Shown piece after piece: positions 10,471-25,686 of a stretch of 64,000 nt of DNA; positions within the stretch are counted from its first letter, which is position 1, and each line of letters opens with the position of its first letter. The notes below the pieces were generated by a model, which was not told the DNA's origin, ran no database searches, and worked only from the letters and a program-made list of their open reading frames with translations. The position numbers and the translations under genes are program-made. This DNA is from Magallana gigas (taxonomy: Eukaryota), in the NCBI RefSeq assembly GCF_963853765.1, contig NC_088859.1, positions 38,254,001 to 38,318,000 of the forward strand. Direction: 5' to 3'.

Positions 10471-13150
10471 CTAAATAGCATTTGCTGCACTTGACTGGTC
10501 CTCATCTTGGTCTAGTGTATGGCAGATGGACTGGTAGCAATTGTACTGCTCAGTAGGGTGGAGAAAAATCTTGATGTCTGATGCCTTGGGGTGGCAGGTC
10601 TTGTAGTAAATAAGTTGAATAACAATATGTAACACACAACCTCCTGCTACTGCTCCAATGGCAGTGAAATAAAGCCAGTCTTCCTTCTCACTCCCAAAAT
10701 GCAACCACATTCCAAGCATGAAAATGTTTTCAGCATAAAAAAGAATGTAGTAAACAATTGCTCTGTACCTTGTATGACCATCTCTAGCATTCAGGAAACA
10801 AAAGATCATGGCATATCCCAGGATAATGTTAAAGATAACCTCATCTCTCCTCTTCTCACCATAAAAACTAGTCTTCTGACAAAGCAGCCACAGAGTCATA
10901 ATAATCCAATGAATAGCGGCAGCTACAAGTACGAAATAGGTAAATTTTGAAGCAAACAAGGCCAAAATAAGCACCCTTGGTCCAATCTCGCACATCCTCC
11001 AAGAGAAATACCCGATGGTAAGCATTAGTGTGGCCAGAAGGCTTTGTTTCTTTGGCTTGTGGTTTTCGTTCTGGTCTTCTTTACTGACGTACTTTTCGTG
11101 GAGTTCCGAGTGTTGCATGGCTCTAAGTGCTTTGTGGTAGGAAGTCAGACTGAAGGAAAGGCCTATCCAAGATCCAACCAGTGCAACCACTCGAATGATT
11201 TCTGATAAAAGACAAAATTTGCTACCAATTACTTAATTTATCAGACATTTTGTGTCAGATTTTCATTACTTTTTTTTGTGACTTCTGATACTGTAATTCA
11301 TTGTACATATAAACTGGTCTGTTTATAATGTTTTGAAGCAAAGAAAATAGAACAATCGTACACATACATCATATTAGCATGTATAGTACTTTTCCGACCA
11401 TCATTTATTATAAGGTTGGCGACAAATTACATATCAGATTACATATCGGATATGTTACAATAATAAGTCACAAGTGTCAAATAAATTTCCAAAAACGACC
11501 AAAAATCAAATTATTATCTGGTAAATGAAATTCAGAAAATGAAGCTGTAATTTTCTTCAGGAACATCAGGCAAAGCATTATACAAAAAAATAAAATTTGA
11601 AAACAAGCTTAACATAAAATGCTTACTCATATGCCCATGCTCTACTAGATCATTGTTCCCATCCACACCATTCTCAATAATTTCTCTAAACAAGATGAAA
11701 AGCTGAAGGACAAGTTGTGGAGCAGCCTCCAGAAAGCATTCAAACATGCGAACCAAGCCAGCATCAGTATCTTCATACAGCATTTGTTTATAATGATGCC
11801 ATTTCTTCTTTCTTTCTTTTTCTGTTGCATCACTACCTGACTTGCTCTTGATGCCGTGGTAAATGAATTCAGAATGTCTGAAGTGTAAAGTAATTGTTTG
11901 TCTTGAGCAATGTTTGGCAATGAGATAGATTTTGCATGTAAAAAAAAAATATACTGTGTATATTAGGGCTTGACAACTTTAAAATGTCAGATCCTATTTG
12001 GGCAAGCAAAGCAATAAAGCAAACTTTTTTTTGAATTAATTTTTGTTGAGTGAACTGCCATAACAAGACCAATGTTATTCAATATTATTATATATTTTAA
12101 GTGATACTGTATGTCGTTTTAATTCCACATCACTGTGTTGAAATTTTACGATTTCTCAAAAAGTACTAATCGCAATCCAGAATGATTTCATGGTGCAGTG
12201 ATCAAAGTATGAAGCATTAAAACGTATTTGAGAAGTAATGATAGTATTCACGATGGGTCAATTTTGCGGGAAAATCCCTCACACTGTGAAATTAAGACCC
12301 TCGTGATTATGTGCCAATTTACAGTATTTATATACTCTATGGATGCACGATTGGATTTACAGGCTTATATAGTTTGTCATTTTGGTAAAGTATTGCAAGC
12401 TCGCAGATATAGTCATCAAGACAGAAGAATGAAGTGACGTCAAGTGCAAGTCTCAAGCCCCAAGTAACGTGATGATGTAGGTTAATAACATACCTCTGAA
12501 GAGACAAAGAAGTACAGGTATATAATATTTTTTAACTTTATAGTAAGTACAAAATTAAGTGAAATATACCTTACAACTGGTCCCAACATCAGCGGAAACG
12601 TGAAGAAAATTCTTAAAGCCCAGATCCTGAATGGGGTAACCTCAGTCTTTGGTTTCTTTGACAGTTTTTTCTGCTCCTGCTCATAGTCAACCAAATACCA
12701 CCGAGCACTTTGTCCATTTGATATCAGAGCTGGCAACACAATAAACCCAGTCGTGAATCCAAATGCAACCCATCTATCAAGTGCATAGTAGTGTACAGCC
12801 AACAGAACATCTGACACAACATCATAAAAGAACAGAATGATTGAAAACACGGCAAAAATAATGTCATAGTACTGAAATGGGTATTTAATGGTTTTAAAAA
12901 TCTTTGTTTTCTTTCCCTTTCCTTTGATTTGTACGGCGCAGTCTGGTTGAGATTCCCCTGAATCTCCATTTTCAGGTATGTCTATGTCGTTCTTTTTTAA
13001 GTTGTTCTCAATCAATTCGAGTTCCCTGTCAACAGTGTCCAGCCTTTCTGCCTTTTCTTTTTCTGCATAATACACACGGCGAGTGTAAGGCACTTTTCCA
13101 CTCTTAACTAAAGGCATTAGTTTATGTCTGACAGTATCACCGGAATTCAT
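10471..13150 (-). CDS. XK-related protein (XKR4/6/7-like phospholipid scramblase family), 520 aa, 3 exons
   Basis: Exons 12570-13150, 11627-11877, 10471-11201 (phases 2,1) total 1563 nt. XK family motifs include YDVVSDVLLAVHYY, FECFLEAAPQLVLQL and SWRMCEIGPRVLILALFAS, with multiple TM segments. Exact paralog not assignable by eye. Confidence 0.93.
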
Positions 13151-14566: not shown

Positions 14567-17500
14567 ATGGGATGTTTGGGGTTATTTTGGTTTTTGCTAC
14601 TGTTTGCTTTGCTGAAATTCTGCCATGCTGGTAATATATCGTGATATCGTATTTTTGTTAACAGTGATTTCATTTCTATTTTCTTTTACGACACTCCCGT
14701 GATATTTTGCTTTTGTAAATAAGTGTAATATTTTGTTAAAGCCAAGAAAGGAAGTTTTATTCTGTCTGAACTGCATTGTAACATTTGTATGTTTTTGTTG
14801 CTTTGAAATCATTATTTTATGCCATTACTTAGAAGAGTATCATTTTGACAAGCTTGATTTGCTAAAAAAATGTCAAAACTGCGGTAGTTATTGTTAAAAC
14901 AGGTGCTTTCTTGAAACTCCACTGTACAATAGGGTTTTTAATCTGTTAATTTCTATCTGTAACCTTATAGGAATATAATGTCAATGTGCATATTTATGTC
15001 TACATGCAGACAGATTGCAATACAATGGAAGTTACTAACGATAATTTTTTTTCAGGATTTGATATTTATAATATAAAGGGAAATCTTTACTTACTTACTA
15101 TCTATATATAGTGATCCGCTAGATCTGCATGCAAGATGCAACATATTTATATCAACATGCAACATATTCATGACGACATGTTTAAATTACATATTTATGT
15201 TGATATGCAACATATTTACATGTATGTTGAGAAGCTTGTTAATTAAATAAATACTTAAAATATATATATGAATGTCAGTATAGGCTGGATAAATATGTTG
15301 ATTTGCAACTTCATTATGTCAGCATGCAATTGACTCGTTTCTTTATAGTAATGAATCACAACATTATTATGGTGCATCTTGCATATAAGATGTCAGATAC
15401 TAGCTGGTCTTAGTAAGTAGCTTTATTTACATCATCAAAATCAGATTTTATTCAATCTGAGATTTGTAACTTGGATGAAAACTTAATATTTTAAATTACC
15501 GGGTATTATCTTGCATGTGACGCACAAACATACAGAATTCTGCCAAAAAATTATCCCTATATTGTGTTTGGTTGAAAGACACACTTTCACAGCTAAAAAT
15601 TCTTTATGGATTTTGCATATTAAAATGATTTAAAAATAGTTTAAATTATTTAATCAAGAACTTTAAAATTGATAAAAGATAACAGAGTTTTCCTTTATAT
15701 ATTTTTATAAGAAACATGTTTTATGTGTCAATTTTTCTGGGGTATATAGAAAGGACATATTTATTAAGAAATCATGGACCTTTTTTTTCACTGATTTTCA
15801 TTGGAGTAAATTATTAATAGTTATTTTTTTAAGCACAGAATTGTATGCATTTGTTGGTGTCTTTATTCGAACATGTTATTACTGTTTGTTTGTAAATTAC
15901 AGAGTCAGAATGCATGGTTGGTGAATGTATGTATGGGAATGACTTCTGCATTAGTGGCAGGGGGTGTCTCTATGGATGCCGGCAGGGGTACTCTGGCAAG
16001 AATTGCGATAGAACTTGCTCCTCAGGGTAAAATTTTCTCTTTTTACCATTTTGTTAGATACACAAGCAAGAGTTTAGATAGATTCATATACAGTACTCGT
16101 ATCAATTTTTTTTTCTCTGTATTTTAAATTTAGCAAAATAAAAAAAAATGCACTAGTATGCGGTACATTTGATACTTTTTGTGTAAGTTACTTAATTTTT
16201 GGACATTTTAGGTTCTAAAATTTCATATTTTTCAAATGACCTGCATTAACCAATATTTTATCTAAACCTGAATTTGTTCTTTATATTTGTAATTTAAAAA
16301 TAATCCTAAAAAGTCTAGAAAGGTTGTTTTGATATAGAAGTGACCGTATGATTGCTCATAGAGACAATGTGCATGTGTTTTAATCTGAAATGCTCTGATA
16401 AAGGAACAGTTACATTTTATTTCTTTCAAACAGTTGTGTGGAATGTCTCTGGGATGGTTATAATGAGACCTGCACTATGTGTAAACCTGGTAAATATGGT
16501 GCAGGCTGTACAGAATACTGCAGCAAGAACTGCAAAATAAACCAGACGAAATGTGACAGGTTTGGCCACTGCCTTTATGGCTGCAATATTGGCTGGAGAG
16601 GAGAAAGATGTGATGAGCAAGATTGTGATTTTGAAAATTGTGTGAGCTGTGGCGTTGCCAATAACTACATTTACTGTTCAAACTGTACTTTGGGAAAGTT
16701 CTGGAACATTACCTCCCATTCTTGTGTGAACTGCAGTGATTTCTGTAAAGGAGGAAGTCTTGCCTGCAATACTACAACAGGAGTCTGCTTCAATGGCTGT
16801 AAGCATGGATACTTTGGTTACAACTGTGATAAAATATGTACGATAGACCACTGTAATGAATGCAAGGAAAACTACTACCACAGAATGGACTGCTTGTCAT
16901 GTGATGAAGGGTATTACTCAGAGAATTATCAATGCTTGCCCTGCAGAGGACACTGTGGCAATGGAGAGTTCTGTGATAAAAATACAGGAGTGTGCCATAG
17001 TGGTTGTGCACACGGATGGTATGGAAAGTATTGTGACAGAGAGTGTCTGATCGAGAACTGTACAAAATGCTCTGATCAGGATTATCCACAAATGGTTTGT
17101 TTGAACTGTGACCAAGGGTTTCATATGTCAATGAATGGATTAATCTGCAAGGAATGTAGCAGTCACTGTAAGGGTGGTCAGTCAGCCTGCAGTAACAGTG
17201 ATGGCAGGTGTAGAGATGGCTGTGAGTTGGGATTCTATGGGGAAAGTTGTGAGACGAATTGCAGTGCATTCTGTGCTGGTGATGGCTCTTGTTTGATGCA
17301 AGATGGTTATTGCACATATGGATGTCTAAAAGGCATGTATGGCAATCAGTGTGATAGGAGGTGTCCCACAGAATGCACACAGTGTCAGGTATATATAGAC
17401 ACAGGGATGTGCTCAGAGTGTTTTTCTGGATGGTATGGAACAGTTTGTGAACAACAATGCAGTCAGTACTGTAAGAGAAATGCTTACAGTAATTTCATTC

Positions 17501-20500
17501 ACTGTGACAAAGACTCTGGAAGCTGTTTGGAAGGTTGCCTGCCTGGGTATTACGGTGATTTTTGCAATTTTACCTGCAGTGAGCATTGTTCATTGAAAGA
17601 GTGCTACAGAGAGAATGGAAAATGCAAGTATCCCTGCAGTCCGTTCCGTTTTGGGGACTACTGTGAAAGTACTTGCCCTAAAAACTGTAAATATCAGTCA
17701 CCTGACAGAAAGGCTTGTAATGAAATCACTATGATGTGTGTGTACGGATGTCAGGATGGGTTTTATGGTGACTACTGCAATAAAACATGCCCTCTTAACT
17801 GCGAAAAAAGTCAGTGTGATAGGGTATCTGGGATATGTAAAGACTGCATACCAAAATTCTATGGACCTCAATGCAACATTACATGTCCTGTAAATTGTAA
17901 TAAAGACATATGTAGTCGTTATGATGGATCTTGCACCCAGGGATGTTCTTCTAATATGTTTGGAAAGAACTGTTCCTCTCGCTGCAGTTCTTGGTGTCAG
18001 GGGGGCACCTGCTTCCACCAAAATGGCTTCTGTGACCAGGGGTGTGATGTTGGTAGGTATGGATTGGAGTGTGAAAACACATGCAGCTCAAATTGCCAAG
18101 GTGCTTTTTGTGAGCAGATGTCTGGAATATGTACCAATGGATGCTTGGAAGGATGGACAGGAGACAAGTGTGATAAAAGTAAGTCTGGAGACCAATCAGA
18201 ATTAAGACAATGTTCCTATCATAATGATGAACTTATTAGTGATTGGCAAACTCAGATTGTTGCACATGATGTGTAAGATGTATTGCATAAATACAAATGT
18301 AAATGTATTTTGCAATATTCAGTGCAGGTAATAAACTATAAATGACAATGCAAATTGTTTTATAAAATATTAATGAAGATTCTGTTTCCTTTTACAGAAT
18401 GCATACCTGGCAGTTTTGGACCTAACTGTGATCAGAGGTGTGGAGTGTGTAAGGACAATGAGGCATGTGACTATCGCAATGGAGCGTGTCCCCAGGGCTG
18501 TGCTGAGGGGTGGACAGGGTCAACTTGTCAAATGGGTAAACAAATTATCAGGTTGTCAAAGAGGATTTTATATTTATTGTCCCATTCTACTGATTCACCA
18601 TCGTGTATTAAAAAAAGCAAATGACAACCATATTACCGTATATATGAACATTACAAATATATGTATCAAGCCAGGTATAAACAGGATGTAACATAGCAAT
18701 GCATATAATAATTTACATCTTTTTCCAGCTCTCAGAAGCTCCAATAGCTTGAAAGATAAAAATGCTGACACCATGGCCATTGCAGGAAGTGTGACAGCAG
18801 CCATGTTGTTGACAATTTTGACAATCATCATTGTAACAATTATTGTCAGGCGGAAGCACATGCATCTCTGTGCTTCATGTACAAAACCCCAAAAGAGCAC
18901 TAATGTCCTTGAAGATGAAAACCACTCTCCAGAGGTAAAAAAAAAGACTATTTCTTAAAATTAAGTTTATGATTTGGTTTGTCTGTACGGTATGTACTGA
19001 TGTGATTGAATGTTTTGTCGAAGAAGAAGGCAAGCTACATACTTACTTACTTACTGCCTGTGAAGTCTTTGGTGTATAGGGCAGTAAGTAGAAAAAAAGA
19101 GCTTCTTCTTAAAACAAGACAGAGAAACTTGAAATAGTGACACACATTTTGTTTTGCATGTACTTTTTATTGTACGTGACATTAATTTTGGGGGAACTCA
19201 GTTGGTATTTGGAGGGAGAAGTGGTGTAAGAATTTTTAAATCAGCTTTCTATAACAAATAGGAAGGTGTTCCATTACTTCATACCATCTGCCCTTGGCTC
19301 AGGCACCGATCGCAGAATTTGGATGAAAATGTAAGCATCTCACTGAAATAAAGTGTGGAATGTGTAATATATAACTCTTTAATTTTAAAAATGGCTTTAA
19401 AGAGTTGAATTTAGCTTTCATAGTTAGAAAATTGGTATTAAATGAGGTGTATATAATGACATTTAACATATCTATGAATATATCATAGATGTTGTTGTTT
19501 TTTGACAACTGAATTGAGTAGTCGGACTAAAAGCTAGTGTTTCATTGCTATAATATTTATCTGCTTGTAATACCTATATAAATTCATTAAGCAGTTAGAC
19601 TTCTTATGATATATTAGATGCATAGATAAAATGAATCAACTTGAGAGCTTTGATGGTCACTCATGTTATAAACTACGGTCTTGTATATAACACACACTAT
19701 ACTAACAATCTGATTATCAGGTTCCAGAAATTTTATTACTTATTCACTACCATGGCTCTGGTGGCCTTTTGTCTGGTATTGTGGCGTGTTGTGCATTATG
19801 ACTCAGTAGATTCCCTACCTTACTGCATTCAGTTGAACTTCCAATATCTCAAACACCGAATTCTCAAATACCGCTACAATGGATATGTGGAATTGATTTG
19901 AGAGTCCCAACCCCTTTTTTTTGAGTATTTTACCCTCGATATCTGGAAGTTTTTAAACAGTCCCATCTAGTTCGTGATAACGAAGTTTGACTGAATGATA
20001 TTTTATATCCAAGTATTAATTGTTGTTAATTTGATGCACCCAATAGTGTGTTTTTTAAATTATAATAATATTATCATCCCTGTAGCCAACCTGTATTGTT
20101 AAATAATTGTTTAACATCTTCAATACTATTTAATTCTACCCCTTAGATATTGATATATCTTCCTATCCATGCATCACAACACATTAAATTACCCACTGGA
20201 AAGAACTGTGAATTTCCATGGATTTTTTACAGAGCTTTAACTAAGGTTAAGGTCCATGGGTCTCTTGTTTATTTCGGTCATGGAAATAAATACCTTAGAA
20301 TCAAGAAAAGAGGGTTGAAAACCTTTCTGTGAGACTTTTAAACTCAGCAATATCTTAAAAGTTTAATGTTGCTAGAAGTTCAATATTTCTGTGCATCTCA
20401 GTCTCAAGTAAAGAGATTATCATCTGGAACATTTGAACTGCTAAATTGAATGATAATCCTGAAATTAAAAGCTAAAGTGGTTACCCAGTCACTCAGACTT

Positions 20501-23500
20501 GGGGTCAGTGTTAATTATTATCTGTCTACTTCTCATTACCGGTAACTGAAAAGTTTTACAGTGTACATGAACAGTATGTGAAATCTTATGGTATTCAGTA
20601 AGTACAATCTTTTAGCAACTGTTACAAAATATTTAATTTATTTAATGATAAGAAGAACATGTTTTTCAGACTTTTGGATTCCAAATGGAGGGTGGCACTG
20701 CTATAAGAAATGCAGGTAGGGAGTTTTTATCCACTGCTGGTCAGAGAAACTTGGATCTGCATTTTCTACAAGTCTCCTCGGAGGCCTCATTCCTCCAGAT
20801 GCCACTGGACATATCACTACGCAATGGGGAATACAAGCATCACGCTGTGCTTGTCAAGTGTCTAAACAGAGGTCTGAATTTTGTAATATTTTCATCCTTG
20901 GTGCTTTTGGTTCTTTGTAAAAATGAATTTAAATTTATAATTAAAATCTGTGAGTATCAAGGTGCTGGATTTAGCTTTAATTGTAACAAAATATTAAATC
21001 AGGAATATATTTCAAGTGTGTGTCTTGTACGTTTTTTGAAACATACATGTGTCATATTATGAATTTGTAAAAAGGAAAATGTCAGGGTTGTTTAGAAGTT
21101 GTGTAGTTTGAATTCCTTGATATTCCTTGAATATAATATTTTGTCATTACATGTATTTAACTAATATTGTTAATTTCTTGTATCTTTAAAGAGCGCAATA
21201 AAAACCAGAGGGTCAGATTTAAGAATGAAGTGGATATTCTACGGTCTCTGGAAGATGTGAATAGCTGTTCTAATATCTTCTGTTTTTATGGCTATTGTGA
21301 GGATGAAAGTAAGAAACAAAATTATCATGAGTATAACCATGTCTTGAGGAAATGGGATGATTATTATATGTTAAAAGTAAATTTAAACATACATTACATG
21401 TACTTTTATTTAGTACCATAAATTAATAAGGAAGGATTCAGAATTAGGTTTTAAAATTTTTTGAATTTTAATTTTTTCCAACAGAGTTTGAATACAGTGT
21501 CTTTGAGAAGTGTGACCAAGGGGACTTAAAGCAGCATCTGAAACAGCTTCGATACAGCTCTGAGAACCCTCCTAATGTAACCTTCAGCACCAAATCTACT
21601 GAACTAATCACACACGCTCTCGACGTTTTAGCTGGAATCATCTACTTGAAGGAGAAAAAGGTATGGTGTATTGTATGCATTTTGAATACCAGTACAAAAA
21701 AATTGTTCAACGTATTTGAAATTCTTTATTAGGTATTTAAGAGCATATGCTCTTTTTTATTTTGTGAAATCATATTTCTTTTTTTGCTCCTCTCTCACAG
21801 ATAATACATAGACTTGTGATTCCAATGAATGTGTACCTGTTTTCTAATGGAAGAGCTAAACTCGCCAACTTTTACTTTGCCATCAGCTCATCCTCAGAAT
21901 CTCAGTCAGATCCTGTAAGTCAATTGTACTACATGTTATTTACATTGTGATATCGTACAATGTGTACTGAAATGTACAAGTACTTCTGGAAATTTTTGAC
22001 AATGGAAATTAACTTACGAAGGAGAAAAAAAACCAACTTGTATACAATAGTTTGCTATGGTCTGATATTTAAGAATTTACATGTATATGGCATGTAAAAT
22101 GTTGCATGGATGTACATGTATATGTACTTGTAGATGTAGATGATTTTGACGGTAATTTTATTGACAGGTTCCTAGAACATATTACCCATGGCTGGCTGTG
22201 GAGTCCAAAAGACAATTGATATATTCTAACCAAAGTGAAATGTGAGTTTTACATTTTGCATTGTTTGAGTCATACAATACAGACTTTACACTTAAATATT
22301 ACAAGATGTTAAACATTGCTGTTTTGAACTTTTCATAGCTTCATAGCCTTGACAAAGAACTATATATGATAAGAGTTAAATTTGGCCCCCATAATTCACC
22401 ATTTTTTAAAGTGTTTTGGGTACAATAAAATGTTATGTTATAATTTAGAAGAGTTGATATAAAATATATTTTTTACATATTTGCTTGATTTATCTGCACT
22501 CACTTGCAGTATATGACCTCAGAAGTGACACTATTTCTATAATTCAATCAAAATTAGTCGAAAATTGACATTTTTCTTATCTTTTTACAAATGGGAAATA
22601 TAAAGCGCATGCTTGAACCTGGACAAATTTTTTGTCACTTATTAGACTTGGCTAGATACATCTCTGATTAAAATAATTTGTTGGTTCAAGCATGCGCTCT
22701 ATGTTTCCTGAAAGAAAAACTGCTTGAAAACAAGCTTTTTTATGCTAATATCCAAAAATGGTGCGAAAAGGTTGTCTTTACAATGCCGTTTTTCTAAATT
22801 GTGGGCACTTAAATCGAAATGAAAATTACGTTTAAACATCACATATATATCTGTACAAAGAAAACAAAGAATTACAGTAAAATAATGATATTCCTATAAG
22901 GGGGCCATTTTAGGCCCATACCATATATTGTCCTTTGAGGAATGAATAAAACTATAGTTATAAAAATTTCACTTCATATAAAATGGAGTCACAATATCCC
23001 AAGATCATGTTTAATCACATGTACCTGTATCTATTTAATTTTTTTATGTCAGAATGGTAAGTATACATTGCATATTATTATGCAAGTTCAGTCTCTCTTT
23101 GAAAATATTTGATAATTTTAAGGAGGAAGTCAGTTTAATTAAAATCAATTTATGAATAACATACATGCTTTTCTTATTGGTGACATAATTTTTTTGAAAT
23201 TGAATTGTGTGTTCTTTGATTTGATACTGGGACAAGTTCTGTTGCAGGGTTTTATAGAGTCTCTCCTTGAATATAGCAGTATTTTCAATCACTCTCTGAC
23301 TTAATTACTAATATGCTAGTGTCTGGTTTCAGATGGACATTTGGGGTCCTTCTGCTGGAGATTGTTAGTCTCGGATACAGTTTTCCTAGAGAAGAAGGGG
23401 AATTCTACCTTATACCTCCAAAGTCATGTGACAAGAAGTTGTAAGTTGTAATTAGAGCACAGATCCTTTGATTAAAGCTTGATTGTTATGATATGAAAAT

Positions 23501-24531
23501 CTAGCGAATACTGTTCAAACTGTATTTGTGCTGTTTTAAAATTACCATACTCTCAGTAAAAGCATGCTTGTTCTCAAAGAACTTGCAGTGCTCTATGGAC
23601 TCTCCTTTTATGTGGATGTAAAATTAAATACATCCAGGAAGTCGGAGCAGTATTCCTTACAGATTTATGGGTTTCTGATGATGAATTTGAATTTGTATGT
23701 ACATGTATATTCAGTGTGATCTTATTATCGGATGTTAACATCAAAAATAAATTTGTATCCTCTCAGAAATTGGTTGATGGAATCTTGTTGGAGCAAATCT
23801 CCTGCTAGCAGACCATCTTGTCAGGAAGTGTACAGTCAACTTCAGGGTATCAGACATCACGTGGTAAGTCTTAGTATCAGACATCACCTGGTAAGTCAGA
23901 GTAACTGACACCACCCATAAAGTCAGAGTAACTGACACCACCCATAAAGTCAGAGTAACTGACACCACCCATAAAGTCAGAGTAACTGACACCACCCATA
24001 AAGTCAGAGTACCAGTCAACACCAGATCTGTAAAAGTGGTTATTTACGCTTGGGGGGAAATTTACACTAGTTACGCGGTAAGCTGAAAACCGTGTAAATT
24101 TCCCCCTCGTGTATGGTAAAATATTAAACACAGAGTGGTAAATCACGTATCTGCGTATTTAATACTCACGTGTATTATTTGACCATAGAAAACGCGTACT
24201 TAACCACCAGGGTAAATAACCATTTTTACAGTAAGTCAAAGTATTAGACATCCTGATAAGTCAAGATATAATTCTATAGTGAATATACAGTCCTGTATTT
24301 TGAGATGGTCCTTAAAAAGAACCAGATGGTTGTTTTTCTCAAACTGTGCAAATTAAATAGAGTTGGTTTAAATTACCTATGGTTTAAAAATTAAGAGTTT
24401 TACTTTTGTAGTTTTCTGCCAAAAAAAAACCAAATCAGCCTCCCTAAACATTATGTATGAATTTTATTTTTTTTTCTTTCCAGGAAGTTAACCAGGAAGA
24501 TGATTCGATTGTCATGACAACCATGGTGTAA
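14567..24531 (+). CDS. Single-pass receptor: signal peptide, multiple EGF/laminin-EGF-like Cys-rich ectodomain, TM helix, tyrosine-kinase-like pseudokinase domain (~1,090 aa)
   Basis: Exons 14567-14630 (signal peptide MGCLGLFWFLLLFALLKFCHA), 15903-16026, 16434-18178, 18398-18535, 18729-18934 (TM AIAGSVTAAMLLTILTIIIVTIIV), probable 19262-19330, 20670-20871, 21192-21308, 21485-21660, 21801-21914, 22168-22241, 23333-23440, 23767-23863, 24484-24531. All junctions are GT-AG with matching phases. TK-like blocks include FKNEVDIL, GDLKQHLKQLR, AGIIYLKEKKIIHR, PWLAVES, EIWTFGVLLLEIVSLG, LMESCWSKSPASRPS. Confidence 0.9.
19040..19085 (-). mobile_element. Possible 3' tail remnant of a non-LTR retrotransposon
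   Basis: Minus strand reads gccctatacaccaaagacttcacaggcag(taag)n; (TAAG)n tails resemble RTE-type LINE ends. Very short. Confidence 0.25.
22353..22937. mobile_element. ~585-bp MITE with ~37-bp imperfect TIRs
   Basis: Left caaagaactatatatgataagagttaaatttggcccc; reverse complement of right end caaaggacaatatatggtatgggcctaaaatggcccc. Confidence 0.7.
23847..24012. repeat. 27-bp tandem repeat starting at an exon 3' end/splice donor
   Basis: Two copies of gtatcagacatcac(g/c)tggtaagtc, then four copies of aagtcagagtaactgacaccacccata. Confidence 0.9.
24028..24231. mobile_element. 204-bp MITE with 20-bp TIRs
   Basis: ctgtaaaagtggttatttac ... gtaaataaccatttttacag (1 mismatch); the host repeat (taagtcaaagta) resumes after it. 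Confidence 0.8.
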
Positions 24532-25686
24532 GAGGAAATGCAATTTTTGAAGCTGAATATTCAGACCTTGTTCAGAAATCTACACAGAAACAATTTCTTC
24601 CTATTTCCTCTGCATTGCATCATTACATCTGTCCTCCATCTATTTTTTTTTTCTGCTTTAAGTGTGCTTTTAGATACCAGACAGTCCCAAGTCCCATCAC
24701 TGTTTGGTGTGAAGGCAATATAGGGGACTTCGCCTTTAAATGTGCTAGTACCACATTTCCATTTACCAAAACAAATTCACTATGAGTATTGCCCTGACAA
24801 TTTGTATTATAATTATTCTTCAACATGTTCAGTATTTAAGTATAGATCAGGAGATGTCCAATGTTGTTATTGTAACCAAAATGTTTCTGTGTTGTTTTTG
24901 CTCTGGAAGGAACTATATGTACAATGTACATGCATTCACTGGAACTACATGTATATAATGCAATGCCTGTACATGTATGTAAACTTGATATTGTGTGTGC
25001 CCCGGTAATACAGCGCCAAGGGCTTGTGTTCATGTCTTAAAAAAAAACCAGTTTAAAGCATTCCTTTATTGTTTTGTCTGTACATATCATGTATAATCAG
25101 GTTAATTTCTTTTTTTACTTTTTTATTGCAGATATTTTATATATGTTCATATCAACAAAAAAGATTTTATTTTTCATAGTTTTATCAATGTGTTATGTGT
25201 TTGTCATTTGTTCTGTTTCTTTCTGAATGGTTTGACATTTTGTTGCACCATTTGTTTACTTATATATTTATATATGCTTGATGTTGTGCTTATACATGTA
25301 GACACATAGTTACCAAATACAGCATATAAAATTGATATACTGCAAGTGTGTTACATTTGGCTGTGTATTCTAGTAAAGGTCTTTGGCAGGAAGCAGTTTA
25401 TGCCAAATCATGTACATTGCTAAATACCATGCATATATGTATAATGATAAGTCCATGTTGAAAAAAAAACATGTTAATTCAATTCCTTGCTGATATGTTG
25501 AAAAATCAATTTCTGCAAAGTTTTGTACACCTAAATAAAATATGTTCACAGTATATAATTACAAAATGAAATCAGGTTTATATTCCTGACTTAATGTTGA
25601 CATATGGTGCTTTAATTTACTTGACTAGCATGATGCAAACTACTTGAGCCAATAAGGTATTCATGTTTCAATCTCTTTTATGTGAT

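What the first reader, a model, noticed from the sequence alone, without database searches (positions are those of the whole stretch)
20670..24531. EGF-repeat receptor whose tyrosine kinase domain is an intact-frame pseudokinase
Eight small exons, mostly absent from the ORF track, splice into a complete TK-like fold with the key catalytic motifs altered. The Gly-rich loop reads VSSEASFLQM (no GxGxxG), the catalytic loop reads HRLVIPMN (HRDLAARN with the catalytic Asp replaced by Leu), DFG reads NFY, and APE reads AVE. The beta3 Lys (VLVK), alphaC Glu (FKNEV), catalytic-loop Asn and C-lobe motifs remain, with no stop or frameshift. This suggests a maintained non-catalytic receptor (scaffold, decoy or co-receptor), like PTK7, RYK or EphB6 but on a multiple-EGF ectodomain. 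I do not recognise this combination as a named family.
Basis: partly seen in the sequence, partly recalled or inferred. Interest (0 to 1): 0.82.

Follow-up and report, generated by a model that had tools for sequence, protein, structure and literature searches.

The report
Bivalve EGF-repeat receptor with dead kinase
This Pacific oyster gene encodes an expressed, correctly spliced cell-surface receptor whose Tie-like tyrosine kinase domain lost its catalytic residues in an early bivalve ancestor yet has been kept under strong selection, so it is a real, undescribed receptor pseudokinase family rather than a decaying gene.

Summary
The eight exons at 20670-24531 all have AG/GT borders and splice in frame to a 311-aa kinase-like domain. 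RNA contigs from three studies plus stranded raw reads confirm every junction, including the join from the transmembrane exon.

The full gene (14567-24531, 13 exons plus one cassette exon) encodes a 1070-aa type I receptor. It has a signal peptide, a 686-aa EGF-repeat ectodomain, a transmembrane helix, the kinase-like domain and a C-terminal T-x-V tail.

Orthologues with the same architecture occur in oysters, pearl oyster, mussels, scallops and venerid clams. All lack the Gly-rich loop, the HRD Asp and the DFG Gly. The 13 pseudokinase domains form one clade (97/95). dN/dS among three oyster genera is 0.08-0.18, as low as in the ectodomain.

The protobranch Solemya has the same architecture and all seven kinase-domain intron positions, but canonical GxGxFG, HRD and DFG motifs. 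The loss therefore probably predates the pteriomorph-heterodont split.

The closest solved kinase is Tie2. "AVE" is the Tie/RET-type A-I/L/V-E, not a degeneration.

I infer a non-catalytic scaffold or co-receptor anchored through a PDZ-ligand-like tail. I found no literature describing the family; databases call it MEGF6/10/11.

The parts
14567..14630 (+). Exon 1: start codon and signal peptide (MGCLGLFWFLLLFALLKFCHA)
   Evidence: In-frame ATG followed by a hydrophobic leader and a GT donor. It joins in frame to exon 2 and parallels the N-termini of the C. virginica, Saccostrea and Ostrea orthologues. Inferred; no RNA was laid here.
15903..16026 (+). Exon 2: first EGF-like module
   Evidence: 72% identical to C. 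virginica P0031 residues 21-63. AG/GT borders; in frame in the full model.
16434..18178 (+). Exon 3: large EGF-repeat exon (about 580 aa)
   Evidence: Lies within the 612-aa ORF. 63% identical to C. virginica and 43% to Pinctada. dN/dS is 0.10-0.11.
18398..18535 (+). Exon 4: last EGF-like module
   Evidence: The loose end of the RNA contigs upstream of the TM exon reads the end of this exon (table 7). Homologous in Saccostrea and Ostrea.
18729..18934 (+). Exon 5: transmembrane helix (protein residues 708-730), RRKH stop-transfer and juxtamembrane segment
   Evidence: Covered by RNA contigs at 18728-18932 in X1, X4 and X12. Weak Pfam hits to TM_ErbB1 and EphA2_TM. Hydrophobic stretch located.
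19262..19330 (+). Alternative 69-nt cassette exon (23 aa) in the juxtamembrane region
   Evidence: Junction 18934|19262 is seen in the X1 contig and in 2 raw reads of X20. Skipping is seen in X4, X12 and 3 reads of X20. The exon is in frame with AG/GT borders and is homologous to a segment present in the Saccostrea and Ostrea proteins.
20670..20871 (+). Kinase exon K1: juxtamembrane TFGFQ motif, degenerate G-loop, beta3 Lys (VLVK)
   Evidence: Junctions 18934|20670 and 20871|21192 are in RNA. Alignment.
21192..21308 (+). Kinase exon K2: alphaC helix (NEVDIL) and beta4
   Evidence: Junctions 20871|21192 and 21308|21485 are in RNA.
21485..21660 (+). Kinase exon K3: beta5, hinge, alphaD-alphaE
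   Evidence: Matches Pfam PF07714 positions 79-122. Junctions are in RNA.
21801..21914 (+). Kinase exon K4: catalytic loop HRLVIPMN and NFY (in place of DFG)
   Evidence: Junctions 21660|21801 and 21914|22168 are in RNA. Alignment.
22168..22241 (+). Kinase exon K5: activation segment end and P+1 loop (PWLAVES)
   Evidence: Junctions 21914|22168 and 22241|23333 are in RNA.
23333..23440 (+). Kinase exon K6: alphaF (WTFGVLLLE) and shortened alphaG region
   Evidence: Matches Pfam PF07714 positions 188-203. Junctions are in RNA.
23767..23863 (+). Kinase exon K7: alphaH-alphaI (LMESCW...RP)
   Evidence: Matches Pfam PF07714 positions 236-258. Junctions 23440|23767 and 23863|24484 are in RNA.
24484..24531 (+). 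Kinase exon K8: C-terminal tail ending ...MTTMV plus stop; the T-x-V resembles a class I PDZ ligand
   Evidence: The junction is in RNA. The T-x-V terminus is conserved in all pteriomorph orthologues, while the preceding residues vary.

Best explanation
What it is. The locus (window 14567-24531, + strand; Magallana/Crassostrea gigas chromosome contig C7) is one expressed gene for a 1070-aa single-pass receptor, or 1093 aa with a juxtamembrane cassette exon. It consists of:
- a signal peptide;
- a 686-aa ectodomain made only of MEGF-type EGF-like repeats (116 Cys);
- a transmembrane helix;
- a complete tyrosine-kinase fold that cannot catalyse phosphotransfer, because it has no Gly-rich loop, the HRD Asp is Leu and the DFG reads NFY;
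- a conserved C-terminal T-x-V.

Evolution. It belongs to a family found so far only in bivalves, whose kinase domain is closest to Tie. The catalytic residues are canonical in the protobranch Solemya. They are lost in every pteriomorph and venerid member, which form one clade. The domain therefore became a pseudokinase once, before those lineages split, and has since been held under purifying selection as strong as that on the ectodomain.

Mechanism (inferred). The EGF ectodomain binds an extracellular partner. The dead kinase domain serves as a folded interaction or allosteric module, and the C-terminal tail tethers the receptor to PDZ scaffold proteins. Signalling would then depend on recruited partners, not on its own phosphotransfer.

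Shown: gene structure, splicing, expression, fold, motif states, conservation, single origin of the pseudokinase clade.

Inferred: lack of activity, PDZ binding, the scaffold or co-receptor role, and Solemya as the direct orthologue.
For: - Splicing and frame. All junctions appear in RNA from 3 studies plus stranded raw reads, with first mates on the minus strand only, so the RNA is + strand.
- Full ORF of 1070 aa. Ectodomain composition and TM position.
- Orthologues: C. virginica 70%, Saccostrea 66% and Ostrea 64% identical in the kinase-like domain. Pinctada, Mytilus, four scallops, Ruditapes and Mercenaria are 27-40% identical, all with intact frames.
- Synteny: the same 8-exon structure and the same XK-related neighbour in Ostrea.
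- Motifs: the residue after H-R is L, H, M or A (HGC in P0156), and DFG reads NFY, NFN, NFD, NFH, NLF, DFY, DFC or DFN. Solemya has LGKGNFGEV, VAVK, HRDLAARN and DFG.
- Selection: kinase-domain dN/dS is 0.08, 0.18 and 0.14, against 0.10-0.11 for the EGF exon.
- Phylogeny: the careful ML tree places the 13 pseudokinase domains in one clade at 97/95, with internal topology like the species tree and Solemya as sister in the best tree.
- Intron positions: all seven kinase-domain introns are shared by M. gigas, Ostrea, Pecten, Mercenaria and Solemya.
- Nearest solved kinase: Tie2 is the top hit for three members.
- Fold: the AF2 model of the 70%-identical C. virginica domain has pLDDT 88.3 and pTM 0.86. 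Foldseek top hits are RTK kinase domains with TM 0.74-0.83.
- Tail: T-x-V or V-x-V is conserved in all members that lack the catalytic residues.
Against: - No biochemical test was done. Some kinases with degraded motifs keep weak or unusual activity.
- dS among the oyster genera is saturated (about 1-2.5), so the dN/dS values are rough, though pN/pS of 0.23-0.31 points the same way.
- Solemya's sister position has weak support on the kinase domain alone (34/22). I could not exclude an active co-orthologue lost or missed in oysters.
- The beta3 Lys and alphaC Glu are replaced in Mytilus, and the catalytic Asn varies, so nucleotide binding is not a family-wide constraint.
- PDZ binding is inferred from a 3-residue motif only. 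Venerids have V-x-V, not T-x-V.
- The structure model is of the C. virginica orthologue, not of the window's own protein.
Confidence: 0.78

Rival explanations
1. Dependent co-receptor of an active RTK. The dead kinase domain heterodimerises with an active Tie-like or other receptor kinase and activates or restrains it, as ErbB3 does with ErbB2 or Tie1 with Tie2. It is phosphorylated in trans to create docking sites. This is a variant mechanism, not exclusive of scaffolding.
For: The kinase domain is Tie-related. The 2016 oyster kinome table lists a bona fide Tie-like kinase with 46.5% identity to mouse TIE1, alongside a 29%-identical 'Tenascin-X' entry that probably is this gene. The conserved alphaC, alphaF and alphaH-I core would fit a dimerisation surface.
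Against: No tyrosine is conserved across the family in the alignment. No active paralogue with the same ectodomain was found in the genome. No partner was tested.
Confidence: 0.25
2. Atypical but active kinase that uses non-canonical residues for catalysis, as WNK or CASK do.
For: In the oyster protein the beta3 Lys, alphaC Glu and catalytic-loop Asn are retained. The fold is predicted with high confidence.
Against: The position of the catalytic base is Leu and varies across orthologues (L, H, M, A, or G in the HGC variant), so there is no conserved substitute base. The Gly-rich loop is replaced and lengthened. The Mg-binding Asp is Asn in all pteriomorphs. Lys becomes Arg or Gln, and Glu becomes Asp, in some members.
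Confidence: 0.07
3. Recently inactivated gene on its way to becoming a pseudogene, with an accidentally open frame.
For: Several catalytic motifs are lost. The window's own exons give only weak Pfam scores.
Against: Frames are intact with the same losses in at least 11 named bivalve species from several orders. dN/dS is 0.08-0.18 while synonymous sites are saturated. The gene is spliced, polyadenylated and stranded in RNA from several studies. The pseudokinase clade follows the species tree.
Confidence: 0.02

Closest known systems
Tie receptors (Tie1 / Tie2-TEK)
   Same: Tie2 is the best solved-structure match for the kinase-like domain of three family members: 96-107 bits against about 78-88 for the next RTKs, and 229 against 205 for Solemya. 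Both share the A-I/V/L-E-S P+1 motif. Both have EGF-like repeats in the ectodomain and are single-pass RTK-type receptors.
   Different: Pfam finds no Ig-like or fibronectin III domains in the family. The ectodomain is about 15-17 EGF-like repeats only. The Gly-rich loop, HRD Asp and DFG are lost. The protein ends in a PDZ-ligand-like tail. The family is seen only in bivalves.
Vertebrate and insect receptor pseudokinases (PTK7/CCK4, RYK/Derailed, ROR, EphB6, EphA10, ErbB3)
   Same: The same kind of molecule: an RTK-type receptor with a conserved but catalytically impaired kinase fold. From general knowledge, several of them (RYK, Eph receptors) also end in PDZ-binding motifs and act as co-receptors or scaffolds.
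   Different: The ectodomain differs: EGF-only, against Ig, WIF, Frizzled-CRD/kringle, ephrin-binding or L-domain ectodomains. The kinase lineage also differs. PTK7 (6vg3) scores below Tie2 and the FGFRs. The loss of activity is independent and bivalve-specific.
MEGF10/MEGF11/Draper/CED-1 and MEGF6 (the names given by automatic annotation)
   Same: A long array of MEGF-type EGF-like repeats followed by a single transmembrane helix. All named orthologues carry these names.
   Different: Those proteins have no kinase-like domain; from general knowledge, their tails carry NPxY and ITAM-like motifs. No EMI domain was detected here. The name is an annotation transfer from the ectodomain only.
Bivalve EGF-repeat receptor tyrosine phosphatases
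   Same: They were recovered with the same ectodomain profile (P0041, P0044, P0048, P0051 from M. gigas, P0058, P0061). They have the same kind of EGF array and are single-pass.
   Different: The cytoplasmic part is one or two PTP domains instead of a kinase-like domain, and ectodomain identity is only 26-30%.

Membership tests
Protein tyrosine kinase fold (Pfam PF07714) | Significant sequence match to the PK_Tyr_Ser-Thr profile over the whole domain | tested here: met
   The orthologues P0002 (120 bits), P0003 (154 bits) and P0156 (181 bits) are far above the 23.1-bit cut-off. The window's exons 3, 6 and 7 hit colinearly but below the cut-off when searched singly. The assembled window domain scores 430 bits against the family HMM.
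Protein tyrosine kinase fold (Pfam PF07714) | Bilobal kinase fold | tested here: met
   The AF2 model of the 70%-identical C. virginica domain has pLDDT 88.3 and pTM 0.86. Foldseek top hits are FGFR, MerTK, KIT and RET kinase domains with TM 0.74-0.83. This is by proxy; the window's own spliced protein could not be passed by reference.
Catalytically competent protein kinase | Gly-rich loop GxGxxG | tested here: not met
   The window reads VSSEASFLQM with no Gly, and the loop is lengthened. Solemya reads LGKGNFGEV at the same place.
Catalytically competent protein kinase | Catalytic base: Asp of HRD | tested here: not met
   HRL in the window. The residue after H-R is L, H, M or A in 12 of the 13 clade members and HGC in P0156. 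Solemya has HRD.
Catalytically competent protein kinase | Mg-binding Asp and Gly of DFG | tested here: not met
   NFY in the window. The Asp is kept only in venerids (DFY, DFC, DFN), and the Gly is lost everywhere except Solemya.
Catalytically competent protein kinase | Beta3 Lys, alphaC Glu, catalytic-loop Asn | tested here: met
   The window has VLVK, NEVDIL and ...PMN. These are not universal in the family: Mytilus has VMVR and RDAAML, P0197 has KLVQ, and the Asn is S, D or H in some members.
Tie receptor family | Kinase domain closest to Tie among characterised kinases | tested here: met
   Tie2 chains are the top single-domain hits for P0002, P0031 and P0038. No tree including Tie sequences could be built.
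Tie receptor family | Ectodomain of Ig-like domains, three EGF repeats and fibronectin III repeats | tested here: not met
   Pfam finds only kinase domains, plus a weak EGF_TEN match, in P0002, P0003, P0038 and P0156. PF10430 (Ig_Tie2_1) gave no hit in the genome, but that search rang in no control genome either, so it carries little weight.
Tie receptor family | Active kinase with canonical catalytic motifs | tested here: not met
   See the catalytic motif rows above.
MEGF10/Draper/CED-1 family (database name) | EMI domain plus EGF array, with a cytoplasmic tail that has no kinase-like domain | tested here: not met
   A kinase-like domain is present. No EMI match appeared in the Pfam scans.
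Conserved functional pseudokinase (as opposed to pseudogene) | Purifying selection, intact orthologues, expression | tested here: met
   dN/dS is 0.08-0.18. Orthologues are intact across bivalve orders. Spliced stranded RNA was seen in several studies. The clade has 97/95 support.
Class I PDZ-ligand-bearing receptor | C-terminal S/T-x-hydrophobic-COOH that binds a PDZ domain | tested here: inconclusive
   The motif is present and conserved as T-x-V in all pteriomorph members and as V-x-V in venerids. Binding is not testable with these tools.

The most novel reading that the evidence does not exclude
This would be a bivalve-specific receptor family, several hundred million years old, in which a Tie-type kinase was converted once into a pseudokinase at the base of the non-protobranch bivalves. 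It was then retained, with a PDZ-anchoring tail, as a non-catalytic signalling scaffold. A living protobranch (Solemya) still carries the catalytically canonical form with the same ectodomain and the same intron positions. That gives a natural before-and-after pair for studying how an RTK becomes a pseudokinase and what new constraint replaces catalysis.
Probability: 0.5. Interest if true: 0.65.

Novelty: new variant of a known kind. Interest (0 to 1): 0.52.

Why it matters
Receptor pseudokinases such as PTK7, RYK, ROR, EphB6 and ErbB3 are central to Wnt, planar-polarity and growth-factor signalling. Almost all known examples come from vertebrate and insect models.

This locus adds an independent lophotrochozoan case with a different ectodomain (EGF-only) and a different kinase lineage (Tie-like). 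It is well conserved over deep time and expressed.

Because a protobranch relative keeps canonical catalytic motifs, the family offers a tractable comparison. One can ask which surfaces stay constrained after catalysis is lost, and whether nucleotide binding persists.

It also corrects annotation. These genes are filed as MEGF6/10/11 or 'Tenascin-X', and probably as an ordinary Tie kinase in the oyster kinome. That hides both the kinase-like domain and its inactivity from studies of oyster development, immunity and biomineralisation.

Tried and rejected
1. The window's own annotated protein. Three word-index searches returned only a 622-aa fragment (P0001) covering the large EGF exon plus read-through into the following intron, and orthologues from other species. 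The spliced M. gigas protein therefore could not be passed by reference to the structure or library tools. I did not type it in. The C. virginica orthologue (70% identical, same HRL and NFY) was used as a proxy.

2. C. virginica genomic DNA for dN/dS was not on record. Saccostrea and Ostrea loci were used instead.

3. Close paralogues in the genome. Exon K3 and the C. virginica domain hit only this locus, then generic tyrosine kinases.

4. A possible active sister gene.
   - The best genomic match of the Solemya domain, at C7:42.68 Mb, is a ROR-like RTK with a Frizzled-type Cys-rich domain.
   - Candidates at C6:16.58 Mb and C8:39.10 Mb are other RTKs without a matching ectodomain. I read the C8 gene as RET-like from memory.
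   - None is an EGF-only Tie-like gene. The search was not exhaustive.

5. PF10430 (Ig_Tie2_1) in the genome gave no hit, but no control genome rang either, so this is uninformative.

6. P0108 and P0109, which sat near Solemya in the quick tree, are unrelated multi-domain kinases.

7. The quick tree split the venerids from the rest by long-branch placement. The finished careful tree united them at 97/95.

8. Literature. Searches on oyster or mollusc pseudokinase RTKs, invertebrate Tie and EKC37702 found no description. One search failed on term length.

9. Earlier scan notes held nothing.

10. The alternative frame 'DFWIPNGG' at the start of exon K1, which looks like the W-x-I-P of tyrosine-kinase juxtamembrane regions, ends in a stop. 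It is not the frame in which the RNA-confirmed junctions keep the reading frame open.


Full report
**Where and what**

The window is G000:C7:38254001-38318000 of a 564-Mb, 29-contig assembly. RNA runs that hold the stretch are labelled oyster. I therefore treat the genome as the Pacific oyster.

**Check of the observation**

Reading 20400-24800 and assembling the eight proposed exons gives AG acceptors on all eight and GT donors on the seven that splice onward. The total is 936 nt in frame, encoding 311 aa with a TAA stop at 24529-24531.

Exons 3, 6 and 7 on their own hit Pfam PK_Tyr_Ser-Thr at colinear profile positions (79-122, 188-203, 236-258), with weak scores. The assembled domain scores 430 bits against an HMM of its orthologues.

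Every quoted motif is present. In an alignment with a canonical relative and other tyrosine kinases, each sits at the expected place:
- G-loop VSSEASF.
- VLVK.
- NEVDIL.
- HRLVIPMN.
- NFY.
- AVE.

**Transcripts**

Fourteen RNA-labelled or probable RNA runs hold about a third of the sampled words of 18700-24600, which is roughly the exonic share.

I laid RNA contigs of three studies and raw stranded poly(A) reads on this stretch. They show these junctions, and no others inside the coding exons:
- 18934|20670
- 20871|21192
- 21308|21485
- 21660|21801
- 21914|22168
- 22241|23333
- 23440|23767
- 23863|24484

One 4090-nt contig (X4) carries the junctions shown for it, from the transmembrane exon to exon K3. 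Raw-read first mates lie only on the minus strand over the exons, so the RNA is + strand.

A second junction, 18934|19262, reveals a 69-nt cassette exon (19262-19330). Its 23 residues are homologous to a segment present in the Saccostrea and Ostrea proteins.

**Whole gene**

Using the C. virginica orthologue as a guide, I built a 13-exon model. It begins with exons 14567-14630, 15903-16026, 16434-18178, 18398-18535 and 18729-18934, followed by the eight kinase exons. This gives 3213 nt and 1070 aa, or 1093 aa with the cassette.

The protein has these parts:
- a hydrophobic signal peptide;
- a 686-aa ectodomain with 116 Cys (16.9%), 15 G-x-x-G-x-x-C signatures and 12 N-glycosylation sequons, which is roughly 15-17 EGF-like repeats;
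- a TM helix at residues 708-730, followed by RRKH;
- the kinase-like domain from residue 760;
- the tail ...MTTMV.

**Relatives**

Word-index searches found proteins of the same length and architecture, all with PF07714, in these species:
- C. virginica (P0031), Saccostrea echinata (P0029) and Ostrea edulis (P0030);
- Pinctada imbricata (P0002);
- Mytilus californianus (P0003);
- four scallops (P0032-35);
- Ruditapes (P0036);
- Solemya velum (P0038).

The exhaustive profile search added Mercenaria (P0085) and three unnamed transcript-derived proteins (P0087, P0156, P0197/P0214). All named members are bivalves and are auto-named MEGF6/10/11.

The listing of that search ends at about 200 bits of summed score. 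Single-domain kinases scoring below that are therefore not visible, and I do not claim a score gap.

Kinase-domain identity to the window is 70% (C. virginica), 66% (Saccostrea), 64% (Ostrea) and 27-40% for the rest.

The Saccostrea and Ostrea loci have the same eight kinase exons in order. Ostrea has the same XK-related gene upstream on the opposite strand, as the window does at 10471-13150.

**Motif states**

| Group | Residue(s) after H-R | DFG position | P+1 motif | C-terminus |
|---|---|---|---|---|
| Oysters | HRL | NFY, NFN or NFD | AVE | T-x-V |
| Pinctada | HRL | NFY | exon missing from model | T-x-V |
| Scallops | HRL | NFH | PPE | T-x-V |
| Mussels | HRH | NLF or NFF | AAE or AVE | T-x-V |
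| Venerids and P0197 | HRM or HRA | DFY, DFC or DFN | SPE or APE | V-x-V |
| P0156 | HGC | NFY | PPE | T-x-V |

None of these members has a Gly-rich loop. Mussels also have Arg for the beta3 Lys and Asp for the alphaC Glu.

Solemya has LGKGNFGEV, VAVK, HRDLAARN, DFG and ALE, with a long unrelated C-terminal extension.

**Selection**

Nei-Gojobori estimates were made on codon alignments of the eight exons.

| Region | gigas-Saccostrea | gigas-Ostrea | Saccostrea-Ostrea |
|---|---|---|---|
| Kinase exons, dN/dS | 0.08 | 0.18 | 0.14 |
| Large EGF exon, dN/dS | not calculable | 0.11 | 0.10 |

For the kinase exons pN is 0.13-0.18, pS is 0.57-0.72 and pN/pS is 0.23-0.31. For the EGF exon, the gigas-Saccostrea value could not be computed because pS exceeded the correction limit.

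dS is saturated, so the ratios are rough. Even so, the kinase-like domain is at least as constrained as the ectodomain.

**Phylogeny and gene structure**

A careful ML tree of 42 kinase domains places all 13 pseudokinase domains in one clade (ultrafast bootstrap 97, SH-aLRT 95). Its internal order follows the species tree: Crassostrea pair, oysters, Pteriomorphia at 97/83, venerids apart.

Solemya is their sister in the best tree, but with weak support (34/22).

All seven intron positions of the kinase domain coincide, within the fuzz of HSP ends, in M. gigas, Ostrea, Pecten, Mercenaria and Solemya.

Together with the shared EGF-only ectodomain, this makes Solemya the likely orthologue that retains the ancestral active state. 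The loss then falls before the pteriomorph-heterodont split. That step is inferred, not proven.

**Nearest characterised family**

Tie2 chains are the best single-domain solved-structure matches:
- Pinctada: 107 bits, next CSF1R at 88.
- C. virginica: 96 bits, next FGFR4 at 78.
- Solemya: 229 bits, next FGFR1 at 205.

PTK7 scores lower.

Tie2 itself reads W-M-A-I-E-S (alignment). An oyster kinase that I take to be RET-like also reads A-I-E. AVE is therefore inherited, not degenerate.

Pfam finds no Ig or FN3 domains in family members, so the family is not Tie by architecture.

**Fold**

An AlphaFold2 model of the C. virginica domain, built with a 41-sequence alignment, has mean pLDDT 88.3 and pTM 0.86, with the expected beta-rich N-lobe, alphaC and helical C-lobe. 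Foldseek returns FGFR, MerTK, KIT, RET and ROS1 kinase domains with TM 0.74-0.83.

**Mechanism**

- Shown: an expressed, conserved, folded kinase-like domain without a catalytic base, Gly-rich loop or DFG.
- Inferred: no phosphotransfer. The variable residue at the catalytic-base position argues against a substitute base.
- The residues conserved across the family are structural: the His-Arg of the catalytic loop, the Lys before DFG, the alphaF G-V...E, and the alphaH-I C-W...R-P.
- The C-terminal T-x-V is conserved across pteriomorphs while the preceding 10-15 residues vary. This is the pattern of a class I PDZ ligand.
- I therefore favour a scaffold or co-receptor whose output depends on recruited partners. 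A Tie1- or ErbB3-like dependence on an active RTK is the main alternative.

**Prior knowledge**

The 2016 oyster kinome paper (PMC4883820, S1 Table) lists three TK/Tie entries. One is EKC37702.1, 'Tenascin-X', with 29% identity to human TIE2 (E 2.75e-23), expressed from egg to organogenesis. Its name and similarity level fit this gene, but I could not check the sequence.

The paper does not discuss inactivity. No other paper found describes an EGF-only Tie-like pseudokinase.

**Verdict**

This is a new variant, in both lineage and architecture, of the known class of receptor pseudokinases. It is of moderate interest, raised by the apparent survival of the active form in a protobranch.

Noticed in passing
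window 19262-19330: A 69-nt alternative cassette exon in the juxtamembrane region adds 23 aa, beginning EGVPLLH. It is included in some transcripts and skipped in others. The homologous segment is present in the annotated Saccostrea and Ostrea proteins and absent from C. virginica isoform X2.
   Followed up: yes
window 19882-20078 and 22246-23033: Intronic stretches show RNA word depth 20-100 times that of the exons, on both strands, with many loose ends. They are probably copies of an abundant transposable or MITE-like repeat transcribed elsewhere.
   Followed up: no
window 23846-24011: The end of exon K7 with its GT donor is duplicated about 27 nt downstream (…atcagacatcac[g/c]tggtaagt twice). 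It is followed by a perfect 27-bp tandem repeat of 4.4 copies at 23893-24011. Only the first donor is used in the RNA seen.
   Followed up: partly
window 10471-13150 (minus strand): The upstream neighbour looks like an XK-related membrane protein gene. The same neighbour, with a Pfam XK-related hit, lies upstream of the Ostrea orthologue in the same orientation (L006:1-652), which supports orthology by synteny.
   Followed up: partly
window 20844, 21586-21587, 21914, 23369, 24531: Transcript variants between runs include two non-synonymous sites (Ala to Thr just before VLVK; Ser to His or Asn in the alphaD-alphaE loop), two synonymous sites, and a TAA/TAG stop-codon polymorphism.
   Followed up: partly
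P0033, P0034, P0035 (scallop orthologues), C-lobe: Scallop proteins carry a 100-190-aa Pro-, Ser- and Gly-rich repetitive insert between alphaF/alphaG and the C-x-x-x-L...CW helix of the kinase-like domain. It includes near-perfect PGPSTADHRN repeats in Pecten maximus.
   Followed up: no
P0002 (Pinctada imbricata model): The annotated protein lacks the 24-aa exon K5 equivalent (P+1 loop, ...PW.A.E...). This is probably a skipped micro-exon in the gene model rather than a real loss.
   Followed up: no
L007:45331-50824 (Solemya velum): A second gene with a tyrosine-kinase Pfam hit starts about 4.5 kb downstream of the Solemya homologue on the same strand and runs off the fetched locus. Its first 5.5 kb shows no similarity to the EGF ectodomain.
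   Followed up: partly
P0041, P0044, P0048, P0051 (M. gigas), P0058, P0061: The same kind of EGF-repeat ectodomain is joined to tyrosine-phosphatase domains in many bivalve proteins. This suggests modular reuse of one ectodomain type with opposing, or dead, catalytic tails.
   Followed up: no
G000:C7:42679916-42681589 (L004:5417-7090): A single 557-aa open exon encodes the TM segment, the kinase domain and a Ser/Pro-rich tail of a ROR-like RTK, with a Frizzled-type Cys-rich exon upstream. It is the best PF07714 hit in the genome (E 1e-96).
   Followed up: partly
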